DNA of 64,000 nt from Saccostrea cucullata. Lineage: Eukaryota. Position 1 is the stretch's first letter, and each line of letters starts with the position of its first letter. The stretch is taken from NCBI RefSeq assembly GCF_032062105.1, contig NW_026931583.1, positions 372,001 through 436,000 on the forward strand. Direction: 5' to 3'. The position numbers and the translations under genes are program-made. This document shows, one piece after another, positions 36 through 30,526 of the stretch. The notes under the pieces are model-generated. The model was not told the DNA's origin. It ran no database searches and saw only the letters and a list, made by a program, of their open reading frames with translations.

Positions 36-1065
36 GGACGACGGTAATCCTGGCGGATGATGCCGCTTCCCCTCCGGGATTATTTGCACGGCACGTGTAC
101 CTAGCACTGTGGTGACGTGCGGCTTGCCGAATTTTGAGGCAACAAGTGCCATTTATTTTTGTGATGATAAATTCAGGTGAACTATCTAAGCTCTGATCAT
201 CCCTGTACCAAGATATTGTAGGGGACGGAATTCCTGTGACATGGCATTCCATGGTTAAAGGAGAATTCTCCAAAACATCTACAGACTTCAGATTTTTTGT
301 GAAGTCTGGGGGCAAAATTTGCTGATGTGTTTCTGAAATAAGGGATTTTCCAGAGATTGTTAATAACTATCATTTCCAAACTCATATATTATATACATGT
401 ACTGTACCTACATTTAGAAATACACATTAATAAAAAGAATAATAATTGTTAAACAATTTACTTAAGCTGCAAATTAATTGATTAAAGCTACCCATTGCCC
501 AATATTCTTCAGTAGTATTATATAATATATATAAGTGAAATGTTTCTAGAATATTCATTAGTCATTGATGAACTTTTGAACTTGACTGACCTCTGACATG
601 TAAGTAAGCGGATGATTCCGCTGTTCCTGCTTCGTTAGTCAGTCTGATGGTGTATCTAGCCGTGTCCTCAGAGAATGTCTCCTCGATAGTGAGCGTGGCC
701 ACGCCTCTGTTGTATCTGGTCTCATAATCCGGGCTGTTCAGAGGTAGGTTGTCTTTGTACCACATGACCTGCGGCTCGGAGGCCGAGTCAACATGGCACT
801 CCAGTGTCACCCTGAGAAAGAAGATAGACTTAAAATTAAATACCTGGCTTTTTATGCAGCATTGCATTTGTTGGGTTTTTGAAAAGATTTATAACCTCAG
901 ATTTGAGAAAATGAATGATGTTTTAAAAATAATTATGTACTTTTCTCCTTCCATAACTTCAGCATCTTTGAGTGGCATGATGATTTTAGGGGGTGCAGCT
1001 TTTGGCATAGAGGCAGTAACAGTGACTTCCATTGGCTGAATTTCCTCAGTCACAGCTTGTCCTGC
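36..1065 (-). CDS. Two titin-type I-set immunoglobulin domains (exons 1065-941, 811-591, 332-36)
   Basis: PPKIIMPLKDAEVMEGEKVTLECHV..PQVMWYKD..LTIEETFSEDTARYT..TNEAG and PPDFTKNL..LTMECHVTGIPSPTISWYRD..ARYTCRANNPGG; phase-1 donor at 36 shows the gene continues past the window. Confidence 0.92.
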
Positions 1066-28000: not shown

Positions 28001-30526
28001 TCTGAGACAGGTACTTGAGGCAGATAGTGATGTCATGTGAGTTGTATGTAAGCTGGTAACCTTACCTGGGTATCTGAGACAGGTACTTGAGGCAGATAGT
28101 GATGTCATGTGAGTTGAAGCTGGGGTTGACAGGTTGAGGGGGAAAGGTCAGCACTGGTCCTCCTTGTCTGTCCCTCCCTCCTTTAATATAAGGTCAAGGT
28201 CAAATCAATGTTAACCCATAAATCATTATTCTAAATATTTACATGTGTAGTTCTACACTGCACGTAATATTTCTCTAATTATGGTAGTCATAGATTTAAT
28301 TTCAAATTCAATACATTTAGTGTCTAAAACAAAATTAACTATTCTTAACATATGAGAATATTCCATTCAATTATAATGCTAAGTATAATGTCACTGTATG
28401 TATATGTATCAGATTTCTAGCTGCATATTTATTTCAGTCAACGTGGAGACAGTTTTCTGGATTGCTGACAAATACAAGTGTATCAATTGCACAGGCATAG
28501 GTTTTGAAATGACACTTAATGCTGATAATGTAATGTGTTGAAAAAATTCATCTGTGCATTATCACCCTATGTAATATGCATAAGGTTGGCTGAAATCTAA
28601 GAGCAACACAACGGGTATATACCTGTAAGGTAGACAATCTCTGTTTTCAGGATTTCAATGATGTGAGAGGCCTCCATTCCTCGGGCTGTCAAGTAAAAAA
28701 GAATTTTGGTATAGATCAAAATAATCTTAATTTTAGTCACAAGTAAAATATATATCTTCTGGCATACATAAAAAGACCATTTTCCTACTTCAAAGTTACA
28801 AATATATATTGATATATAATTGATTCAATCTTGTCTCTGTAGAGACTTCCAACATTCAAAGAAAAAAACACTCCTAAAGCATTTCAATTTCAAAAAGTTA
28901 ATATGGTTTTCAAATTGACTGAAAATTTAGAGGCTCTGAATATGATAATATTATATATTACATGTCTATGAATTTATTGAAGGAAGAGAGCTAATACACT
29001 ATGCATGCTCTGTATTTTGATCATGCCAGCGTTTGCCAAGTTCCCAATCCTATATCCTTACACATATAATGTGACATATTGGCTTAATGTGACAACAAGG
29101 TCATTCATATACTGTGTTTGTAAAATATTTCACTTTTATAATAGGATTAATTCTGCTTTACAAAAGATAGATTAAATTCATAAATGGTCAAGTAGACATG
29201 ATTTATTCTATCAAATGTGGAATGTTTTCTATTCAAAAACCATTGATTTCAATGTCAGCCGCTGATAAACATACACTGAGTGTAATGTCTGTTAACTTTG
29301 ATCAGTTTTTAAACAAAACATGGTCAGTCATCAGTTTATCAGTGAATTTGGAAATTCAAGTACAGATACATCATACATGTATTTCACACAGTCATTAAAC
29401 CACATGATTTAATGTGGTTGTTTTGTTGAATGCTTTCAAGTCATATGTATTGTTGTGAACTATCAACCTAGACTTAGCATCATACTAGAGAGATTTTCTG
29501 CTTCTTTTCACAGTAATTGGTAACCACCTCATAACACCTACCTTCAGGTATTGGGTGAGCACCACTCCCCGAGCTGGCCAAGGACATCTGACTCTGAGTG
29601 CTCTGCTGAGTTCGAGTGCTCCGCTGAGCGTGTGAGTACTCACTCCCCTTCCGCGACATCATGGGTGTGGTGTGTGGTGGACTCGCGGCGTCCTTCCTGG
29701 AAGGATAAGGTGAGGTCTGGGACCTCAGTGATCTTCTAGAATCATGTGTGGAGTACCCATTCTGTTTAGGGGAGTACTGAGGGCTTTGGTGGGAGGCTGT
29801 GATTTGTTCTGGCTCCCTCTGATAGGGAGGGGGACCTTCACTGTCCTGGCGAAGGATGGGTTGATTGGGTAGGTATTTGGGAGAGGTTGATTGTGGACTA
29901 GTTTCCTCAGGGTAGAGTGACCTTTGACCCTGAGGTGAGGATGGAGATGGCTGATTCTGTGCATAATTTTGAACTTTTGGTCTAGGACCAGACACAGATC
30001 TCTGGCTCTCACTACGAACTAAGTTCCATTGCTGATCAAGACTCAAGTTCTGGAGACTGACAGGTCTGGATAAGTTTGACCCTTCATTTGTCTTCGGTCT
30101 GATTGGCTGATAATGTGGCTTTTGATTGGTTGGTGAAGATAAGTTTTGTTGACTGCTGTACTGTGATTCGTTCAACTGACTTTCATCACCTCTGATTGGC
30201 CGATATGCTGGTTTGCTGGATTTTTCTTGTGGTCTGATTGGCTGGTATGTTGGCTTAGGAGAAATCTGTTGGCTTCCATAGTGCTGTTTCTCCATTTCAT
30301 GACGGGAGAGATTTGGCTGGGACACATACTTCTGGGTCTGTGCCTGACCAGATGAATGGCCTAGGATCTGGGATTGACTCCTAGGATCCTGGCGAACTGA
30401 TTGGGTGAGGTTGGAGGGTTGGAGTCTGTGATGGGATGAATAAGGGTCATAACCTGGGGGACCCTGCAGAGAATGGTGGCTCCCCTGTCGTGACAAGTTA
30501 GGGGCAACACCACCCTGATAGGCCAT
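36..30526 (-). CDS. Giant SEC14 + spectrin-repeat + Ig-domain protein (SESTD1/CCDC141/titin-like; zormin/sallimus-type). 38 coding exons in the window, 3' end beyond the window start.
   Basis: Hand-spliced exons, all GT-AG and phase-consistent: 30526-29542, 28685-28623, 28180-28066, 24808-24718, 24533-24420, 24304-24191, 23928-23748, 22327-22116, 21870-21748, 21388-21197, 20975-20861, 20561-20320, 19839-19717, 19499-19308, 18127-17940, 17622-17145, 11251-11129, 7972-7781, 7569-7461, 7262-7018, 6729-6610, 6417-6028, 5886-5773, 5565-5443, 5338-5147, 4954-4784, 4430-4257, 3912-3787, 3423-3235, 3040-2864, 2458-2309, 2180-2058, 1890-1699, 1584-1401, 1275-1157, 1065-941, 811-591, 332-36. No internal stop. 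The 17145->11251 junction is inferred. Confidence 0.85.
1157..11251 (-). CDS. CCDC141: CCDC141-like spectrin-repeat exons (19 exons)
   Basis: GAEWIRVRVHQMEPDLTDVGSTLEEALQLRQEHNEMLAKLK / ...ENRSQADVYAAMAETLNEAW... resembles the recalled CCDC141 N-terminal region (..[23 protein letters not shown] ..VYDAMAETLGEAW); followed by many W-containing spectrin-like helical repeats. Confidence 0.85.
10900..11128 (-). repeat. Degenerate tandem copies of the 3' end and donor of exon 11129-11251 inside the following intron
   Basis: Plus strand ggactcactttgagttaagcgagcatttgattgtgtt and ttgagcttagcaagcatttcatt..gtgttcttgtctgtcagtt resemble the exon end gaactcaccttgagcttggcgagcatttcgttgtgttcttgtctgagtt. Confidence 0.7.
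12192..12300 (+). mobile_element. Degenerate tRNA-derived (SINE-like) fragment
   Basis: tRNA-like A-box gtagctctgtgattcgagcacctgactagt and a degenerate B-box region, ending ..ttcctgttaca. Confidence 0.4.
13962..14078 (-). CDS. CCDC141: Internal alternative first coding exon encoding a CCDC141-like N-terminus (MSDRASDITDLSELPPSTTTISTVAVQSGRSKVILAILR)
   Basis: AAAATG start at 14078; in-frame TAA 8 codons upstream with no AG in between; phase-0 donor CGA|GTAAGT at 13962 joins exon 11251 in frame; peptide resembles recalled human CCDC141 STTTVSSVAVQAGDSKIVIAVIK. Confidence 0.8.
17145..23928 (-). CDS. Spectrin-repeat exons of the SESTD1-like half plus an R/S/P-rich linker exon (17145-17622)
   Basis: Helical repeats with spectrin signatures (VVTWIL..GIGDSYHAAEELRKRH; AIDWIL..MGSTQEEAENLQLEHKKFE); ORFs 22047, 21628, 20233, 19269 and 17070 overlap these exons. 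Confidence 0.85.
18340..19177 (+). mobile_element. Degenerate hAT (ZBED-like) transposon remnant in an intron
   Basis: Frameshifted peptide DYMPIQVVEGKGFK/..APNYKIPS..IEKVY../VALTTDALSS..SYITIT (hAT catalytic TTD-W region); right end GACATCCCTA is the reverse complement of a hAT-type TIR TAGGGATG. Left boundary approximate. Confidence 0.75.
19880..20069. mobile_element. Short Tc1/mariner-type MITE
   Basis: Inverted ends cggtatacagg / cctgtatacag-TA with internal inverted ttttgcccc / ggggcaaaa motifs. Confidence 0.6.
24191..28685 (-). CDS. SESTD1: SEC14/CRAL-TRIO domain exons, SESTD1-like (5 exons)
   Basis: Spliced peptide MEASHIIEILKTEIVYLTGGRDRQGGPVLTFPP...LKYLSQIPSEESKRRGFTAIVDSR...QLTHSYGGLLWYNHHEWLQNRI matches the recalled SESTD1/Trio-type SEC14 pattern (MEAS..., GGxD, YLxxIPSE, GFTxIVD, GGxLxYxHxxWL). 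Confidence 0.85.
25252..25813. mobile_element. Non-autonomous TIR element with a 5-bp TSD (hAT5-like)
   Basis: TIRs CAGGGATCGACACTAAC / GTTAGTATCGAACCCTG; CTAGT flanks both sides (25247-25251, 25814-25818). Confidence 0.8.
26827..28116 (-). repeat. 72-bp minisatellite, 18 copies, made of the exon 3' end plus the 5' splice site
   Basis: TGGGTATCTGAGACAGG recurs every 72 bp from 26843 to 28067; copies nearly identical; the rightmost copy lies in coding exon 28066-28180. Confidence 0.97.
29542..30526 (-). CDS. First coding exon: ~328-aa Q/S/P-rich low-complexity N-terminal extension
   Basis: ORF 29480..30529; acceptor TTTTCAG just before 30530; ATG at 30526; phase-1 donor GAAG|GTAGGT at 29542 joins in frame to exon 28685. 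Confidence 0.8.

What the first reader, a model, noticed from the sequence alone, without database searches (positions are those of the whole stretch)
36..30526. SESTD1, CCDC141 and titin-type Ig domains appear joined in one modular transcription unit
Seen in sequence: the last exon of the SESTD1-like half (17145-17622) ends at a phase-0 GTAAGA donor without a stop. The next exon I found (11251, phase 0) belongs to a CCDC141-like spectrin array, which runs on into tandem I-set Ig domains. Established knowledge (recalled): human SESTD1, CCDC141 and TTN are adjacent and co-oriented in this order at 2q31, and insect zormin sits at the 5' end of sallimus. Inference: the three vertebrate genes may be fission products of one ancestral bilaterian SEC14-spectrin-Ig giant gene that is still intact here. 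The product would be a lipid-binding, membrane-tethering titin-like protein. The insect part of this may already be published.
Basis: partly seen in the sequence, partly recalled or inferred. Interest (0 to 1): 0.88.

Follow-up and report, generated by a model that had tools for sequence, protein, structure and literature searches.

The report
Oyster SESTD1-CCDC141-titin (connectitin) locus
This is the oyster copy of a muscle gene region already published as 'connectitin'; the modest new point is that its first two parts, separate genes in humans, are probably still spliced together here as an optional long form, though no RNA read could be tested to prove it.

Summary
The anatomy is real. On the minus strand lie a SESTD1 ortholog (SEC14 plus spectrin repeats), a CCDC141 ortholog and tandem I-set domains; beyond position 1 follows a giant titin with Ig, Glu-rich, Fn3 and kinase segments. 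Trio and twitchin are separate genes. The fission idea is already published ('connectitin', PMC12198301), with the Pacific-oyster ortholog in its data and single-gene forms in cnidarians and placozoans. Two corrections apply. First, the CCDC141 half has its own conserved ATG exon at 14078-13962, before 11251 (the scan noted this on the same window, s1-707216). Second, a possible stand-alone SESTD1 terminal exon lies at 15227. The 17145->11251 join is still likely (about 70%): the donor is strong and conserved in other oysters, the exon end completes the next spectrin helix in register, and NCBI models of five insects are joined, three of them entering at exactly this residue. Best reading: one modular locus with an internal promoter that gives both separate and joined products. 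New member of a known kind; a small correction to 'three genes in bilaterians'.

The parts
29542..30526 (-). First coding exon: 328 codons of Q/S/P-rich low-complexity sequence in front of SEC14; found only in other oysters
   Evidence: 74-82% identical in three Logan clusters only; acceptor and ATG conserved
24191..28685 (-). SEC14 (CRAL-TRIO-like) domain exons 28685-28623, 28180-28066, 24808-24718, 24533-24420, 24304-24191
   Evidence: 73 of 78 residues identical (compared by eye) to Cg-SESTD1 XP_034304301.1 in the supplement of PMC12198301
26827..28116 (-). 72-bp x 17.9 tandem array made of the 3' end of SEC14 exon 28180-28066 plus its splice donor
   Evidence: 17 copies of the donor 10-mer
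17940..23928 (-). SESTD1-like spectrin repeats, nine exons
   Evidence: PF24915 E 7.4e-21 on 20320-20559; atlas top hit SESTD1-like 0.96; 30-37% identity to the same part of joined arthropod models vs 23-26% to Trio-like proteins
17145..17622 (-). Linker exon (low complexity) whose last seven codons read as the first half of a spectrin helix A; ends at a conserved phase-0 donor
   Evidence: similarity in other oysters stops 4 nt into the intron; donor score 10.8 vs gene median 9.2
15198..15227 (-). Candidate terminal exon for a stand-alone SESTD1-like mRNA (nine codons then stop); unproven
   Evidence: 15-mer around the AG invariant in three oysters, each reading K-I-K then a stop within 11 codons; acceptor score 5.3 here, 11.4 in L048, under 5 in L043; poly(A) signal not conserved
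13962..14350 (-). Internal first exon of the CCDC141/zormin-like isoform: conserved leader, ATG at 14078, phase-0 donor at 13962; a further conserved block at about 14660-14545 is the likely promoter (inferred)
   Evidence: in-frame stop 24, 24 and 66 nt upstream of the ATG in three oysters; 91 of 127 long relatives begin with the homologous motif
1157..11251 (-). CCDC141-like spectrin array, 19 exons
   Evidence: 39% identity over about 1300 aa to Saccoglossus titin-like XP_006823021.1, 25% to lungfish CCDC141 XP_043931244.1; PF25075 E 6.7e-15
36..1065 (-). First two I-set Ig domains; the last exon ends at a phase-1 donor and the array continues outside the window
   Evidence: best PDB sequence hits are titin; next Ig exon at about G000:C13720:371050 in matching phase

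Best explanation
The window holds the 5' end of the oyster connectitin locus, a single modular transcription region with at least two starts. An upstream start gives a SEC14-spectrin (SESTD1-like) product. A conserved internal promoter with its own ATG exon (14078) gives a CCDC141/zormin-like spectrin-Ig product that can run on into titin. The linker exon's conserved donor (17145) most likely also splices to 11251, skipping the ATG exon, to give a joined SEC14-spectrin-Ig isoform. In that isoform the last seven linker codons supply the missing first half of helix A of the first CCDC141 repeat; in the internally started isoform the ATG exon instead caps that repeat with a small beta-sheet (predicted in relatives). 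Shown: exon anatomy, orthology, conservation of donor and internal exon, downstream titin. Inferred: the join itself, promoter activity, and function as a membrane- or costamere-linked extension of the titin filament.
For: Donor conserved in three other oyster clusters with divergence immediately after it and scoring near the top of the gene's own donors. Register: hydrophobic residues at -7 and -3 and Trp at +4 of the 17145|11251 junction match the gene's other repeat-opening junctions, and exon sizes 123/192/109/245 after it mirror 123/192/115/242 in the SESTD1 half. Nine public models are joined (Megalopta XP_033332552.1, four Frieseomelitta isoforms, Anthonomus XP_050302710.1, Abscondita KAF5301257.1, Cataglyphis KAL6428692.1, and unnamed UPI0006B0DA35); six of them skip the internal exon and enter at the same residue with a similar helical exon end. 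An intronless 13 kb Logan contig encodes a linker-to-CCDC141 join at that residue, without the SESTD1 domains. AlphaFold gives one helix across the junction in joined arthropod sequences (pLDDT about 60) and a three-stranded sheet in the ATG-exon form (pLDDT above 80). A collinear Ig array, about 53 Fn3 domains and kinases follow on the same strand.
Against: No RNA read or mollusc transcript spanning the junction was obtained. A conserved candidate terminal exon at 15227 could be the donor's only partner. 91 of 127 long relatives start at the internal exon and only 9 are joined. The paper lists SESTD1 and connectin under different accessions for C. gigas, and the Saccoglossus SESTD1 accession differs from the CCDC141-titin one. 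The joined insect sequences are gene models whose read support I could not see.
Confidence: 0.68

Rival explanations
1. Two adjacent but separate genes, as described for human and Drosophila: the SESTD1-like gene ends in a short terminal exon at 15227, and the CCDC141-titin unit starts only at the internal promoter.
For: Acceptor-like 15-mer at 15227 invariant in three oysters with K-I-K and an early stop in each; strongly conserved internal first exon and leader; most relatives begin there; the published conclusion is three genes in bilaterians (PMC12198301).
Against: The acceptor is weak in two of three species and no poly(A) signal is conserved; it does not explain the spectrin-helix register of the linker end or the arthropod models joined at the identical residue.
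Confidence: 0.27
2. One obligate giant gene: every product is joined, as the finding's title implies, and the internal exon is incidental.
For: The open frame is continuous across the join.
Against: The ATG exon, its leader and an upstream in-frame stop are conserved in three oysters, and its motif opens CCDC141/zormin proteins from lungfish to insects and nematodes.
Confidence: 0.03
3. A Trio/kalirin paralog or a chance neighbourhood of unrelated spectrin genes.
For: SEC14 plus spectrin repeats is also the Trio/kalirin N-terminus (26% identity).
Against: True Trio lies on contig C21075 (mostly 46-57% identity per exon, two RhoGEF hits); no RhoGEF hit on this contig; the SEC14 is nearly identical to the published Cg-SESTD1.
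Confidence: 0.02

Closest known systems
Connectitin (SESTD1-CCDC141-CON/TTN), Hanashima et al. 2025, PMC12198301
   Same: Same order and orientation of SEC14, spectrin repeats, Ig array and kinases; the C. gigas orthologs of this SEC14 (XP_034304301.1) and of both downstream kinases (XP_034304307.1) are in the paper's alignments.
   Different: The paper treats bilaterians as having three genes; here the SESTD1-CCDC141 boundary looks spliceable. No RhoGEF was found on this contig, unlike cnidarian connectitin.
Drosophila CG15822-zormin-sallimus and joined RefSeq/GenBank models of bees, an ant and beetles
   Same: Zormin-like proteins start with the same first-exon motif; joined models enter the zormin half at the same residue. 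Zormin-sls read-through is cited in PMC12198301 and PMC12657953.
   Different: The oyster has an extra 328-aa low-complexity N-terminus, a shorter linker (about 130 aa), and an Fn3 array plus kinases downstream; the paper describes Drosophila I-connectin as matching only the I-band.
Human SESTD1, CCDC141, TTN
   Same: Orthologous parts in the same order; CCDC141-TTN read-through transcripts are reported (Labeit 2006, cited in PMC12657953).
   Different: Annotated as three genes; I found no report of a SESTD1-CCDC141 splice in the papers searched. Human sequences and intron positions were not compared.
Trio/kalirin
   Same: SEC14 + spectrin + Ig/Fn3/kinase plan with internal promoters (PMC12198301).
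   Different: A paralog: 23-26% identity, carries RhoGEF-PH domains, and is a separate gene in this genome.

Membership tests
Connectitin locus | SESTD1-type SEC14 domain at the 5' end | tested here: met
   73/78 identical to published Cg-SESTD1
Connectitin locus | CCDC141/zormin-type spectrin array with Ig domains next, same strand | tested here: met
Connectitin locus | Connectin/titin downstream (Ig array, elastic segment, kinase) | tested here: met
   about 66 Ig C-terminal halves, Glu-rich ORFs up to 2266 codons and 53 Fn3 before a kinase matching Cg_CON_A1; a second kinase matches Cg_CON_A2
Single-gene connectitin (cnidarian/placozoan type) | SEC14 to kinase in one transcript | tested here: inconclusive
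Single-gene connectitin (cnidarian/placozoan type) | Central RhoGEF-PH-SH3 (described for cnidarians) | tested here: not met
   no PF00621 match on contig C13720 among 40 genome matches; exon-wise search, so a lower bound
Trio/kalirin | RhoGEF-PH after the spectrin repeats; best match to Trio | tested here: not met
   Ig domains follow the spectrin array; the Trio ortholog is on C21075
Twitchin/projectin | Twitchin-type kinase | tested here: not met
   the kinase matching published Cg_twitchin lies on C9737
SESTD1 | Phospholipid binding by the SEC14 domain (recalled from own knowledge) | not testable with these tools
   needs a lipid-binding assay
Vertebrate SESTD1/CCDC141/TTN | Shared intron positions with the human genes | not tested
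   no human sequence was fetched

The most novel reading that the evidence does not exclude
Oysters, and probably protostomes more widely, still make a transcript running from SEC14 through both spectrin arrays into titin, so the 'split into three genes' is an alternative-promoter arrangement in one living gene. The choice of upstream exon would switch the same exon-encoded segment between a spectrin helix (joined form) and a beta-sheet cap (internally started form).
Probability: 0.35. Interest if true: 0.55.

Novelty: new member of a known kind. Interest (0 to 1): 0.33.

Why it matters
If the join is real, the published view that connectitin diversified into three genes in bilaterians needs amending: the SESTD1-CCDC141 boundary would still be spliced in molluscs and arthropods, and an internal promoter would show how the split arose. 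It would also give an easy animal test of whether a SEC14 domain can tether a titin-family filament to membranes. The larger evolutionary claim is already in print, so the gain is incremental.

Tried and rejected
One script with typed exon-boundary motifs was not run; I defined the exons by coordinates instead. The joined model was not sent to any database search tool: searches were exon by exon, by reference. It was built only in the scratch folder and compared there with proteins already fetched. Two scans of metagenome contigs found no relative. The homolog search with a spider-like query returned almost only arthropods, so no mollusc full-length model was seen. A two-group tree had no outgroup and cannot place the oyster sequence, so I do not rely on it. 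Read-through of the 17145 donor to the stop near 17072 as a conserved C-terminus was rejected: the tail differs in length and sequence in every oyster cluster. My first acceptor at 24826 was corrected to 24808 after comparison with Cg-SESTD1. Conserved blocks at 15804-15693, 13104-12940, 12689-12430, 9216-9144 and 8833-8581 carry indels and do not look like coding exons. The sigma-70 promoter scan is irrelevant to an animal gene. Fold searches returned spectrin repeats at the top and nothing specific for the predicted beta cap.

Full report
Setting. The window is G000:C13720:372001-436000 of a 1.17 Gb, AT-rich assembly. Near-identity to Crassostrea gigas proteins in a published alignment marks it as an oyster; the species was not determined.

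Observation. Exons defined by coordinates all have GT-AG ends. Sixteen exons from the ATG at 30526 to the donor at 17145 give 1176 open codons; adding 22 exons from 11251 to 36 gives 2463 with no stop. Single exons hit Spectrin_SESTD1, DUF7799, Spectrin and I-set. Frame agreement by itself says little, as 27 of 38 exon ends are phase 0.

Identity of the parts. The SEC14 matches the published Cg-SESTD1 at 73 of 78 residues (by eye). A Trio query finds a different contig, C21075, which also carries two RhoGEF hits, while this contig has none. The second half is 39% identical over about 1300 aa to a Saccoglossus titin-like model and 25% to lungfish CCDC141. One test exon from each half is single-copy in the genome. 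Past position 1 the Ig array continues in phase and roughly collinearly with the Saccoglossus protein. My own rough HMM count gives about 66 Ig domains, several Glu-rich ORFs of 400-2266 codons and 53 Fn3 domains before a kinase near contig position 238,500. That kinase and a second near 174,600 match Cg_CON_A1 and A2 of the paper; twitchin is on C9737.

Prior art. Hanashima et al. 2025 (PMC12198301) already propose that SESTD1, CCDC141 and TTN derive from one gene, 'connectitin', a Trio/kalirin paralog. They report it as one protein in cnidarians and placozoans, note the Drosophila CG15822-zormin-sls synteny, and conclude that it diversified into three genes in bilaterians. CCDC141-TTN and zormin-sls read-through are cited there and in PMC12657953. 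In the library searched I found no paper describing a SESTD1-CCDC141 splice.

Is the join real? For: in three other oyster sequence clusters the linker exon is 78-82% identical up to its last codon and the GT, then diverges at once; the donor scores 10.8 against a gene median of 9.2. The exon end puts hydrophobic residues at -7 and -3 and the next exon a Trp at +4, the register of the gene's other repeat-opening junctions, and the exon sizes after 11251 repeat those of the SESTD1 half. Nine of 127 long relatives carry SESTD1-like spectrin repeats (eight also the SEC14) in front of the CCDC141-like part: models from two bees, an ant, two beetles and one unnamed source. Six skip the internal exon and enter at the same residue as 11251; three include it. 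AlphaFold on joined arthropod sequences gives a continuous helix across the junction at low confidence, and on internally started sequences a confident three-stranded sheet that uses the same downstream residues.

Against: no read evidence was obtained. RNA runs hold 8-10% of the words of 11100-18200, about what the exons would give, which suggests expression but not the junction. The internal exon, about 270 nt of leader and an upstream block are strongly conserved, with an in-frame stop before the ATG in all three oysters, and 91 of 127 relatives start with its motif. A 15-mer around an AG at 15227 is invariant in three oysters and gives K-I-K plus an early stop in each, so it could end a stand-alone SESTD1 mRNA; its acceptor is weak in two species and no poly(A) signal is conserved.

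Mechanism. Most likely one modular locus: an upstream start for the SESTD1-like product, an internal promoter for the CCDC141/zormin-titin products, and an optional splice from 17145 to 11251 that bypasses the internal exon and completes the first CCDC141 repeat. I put this at 0.68, separate genes at 0.27. A role as a membrane- or costamere-anchored extension of the titin filament is inferred from the domains and from mouse CCDC141 at costameres (PMC12657953); nothing here tests it.

Limits. The joined model was not submitted to any database search. Human intron positions were not compared.

Verdict. A real, well-supported ortholog of a published system, with a probable retained join that public insect models already show. 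New member of a known kind; interest 0.33.

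Noticed in passing
window 26827-28116: 72-bp minisatellite built from the end of a SEC14 exon and its splice donor, giving about 18 tandem potential donors.
   Followed up: partly
window 11080-11157: 39-bp two-copy repeat that likewise copies the end of exon 11251-11129 into the intron.
   Followed up: no
window 15804-15693, 13104-12940, 12689-12430, 9216-9144, 8833-8581, 31189-30892, 32448-32306: Non-coding blocks conserved in other oysters; candidate regulatory elements or untranslated exons.
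   Followed up: partly
G000:C13720 about 240000-262000: About 50 Fn3 domains, with no Ig detected between 240 and 260 kb, precede the titin-type kinase: an A-band-like segment without the vertebrate Ig-Fn3 super-repeat, although twitchin is a separate gene.
   Followed up: partly
P0004:10-260 and relatives (model maa940223945c): The N-terminus of CCDC141/zormin-type proteins is predicted as a three-stranded beta-sheet cap on the first spectrin repeat; the Foldseek search of the whole model gave no hit specific to it.
   Followed up: partly
window 46772-50033 (+): Frameshifted LINE retrotransposon remnant with endonuclease and reverse transcriptase pieces.
   Followed up: partly
window 56236-60039 (-): Upstream neighbour gene on the same strand with a 3'-5' exonuclease exon (PF01612) at 59695-60039 and an 819-nt ORF without a Pfam hit.
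   Followed up: partly
window 54041-54334 (+): Short ORF with a signal-peptide-like start and a Gly/Leu/Tyr-rich stretch; no Pfam hit.
   Followed up: no
window 61814-63211: 165-bp tandem repeat array.
   Followed up: no
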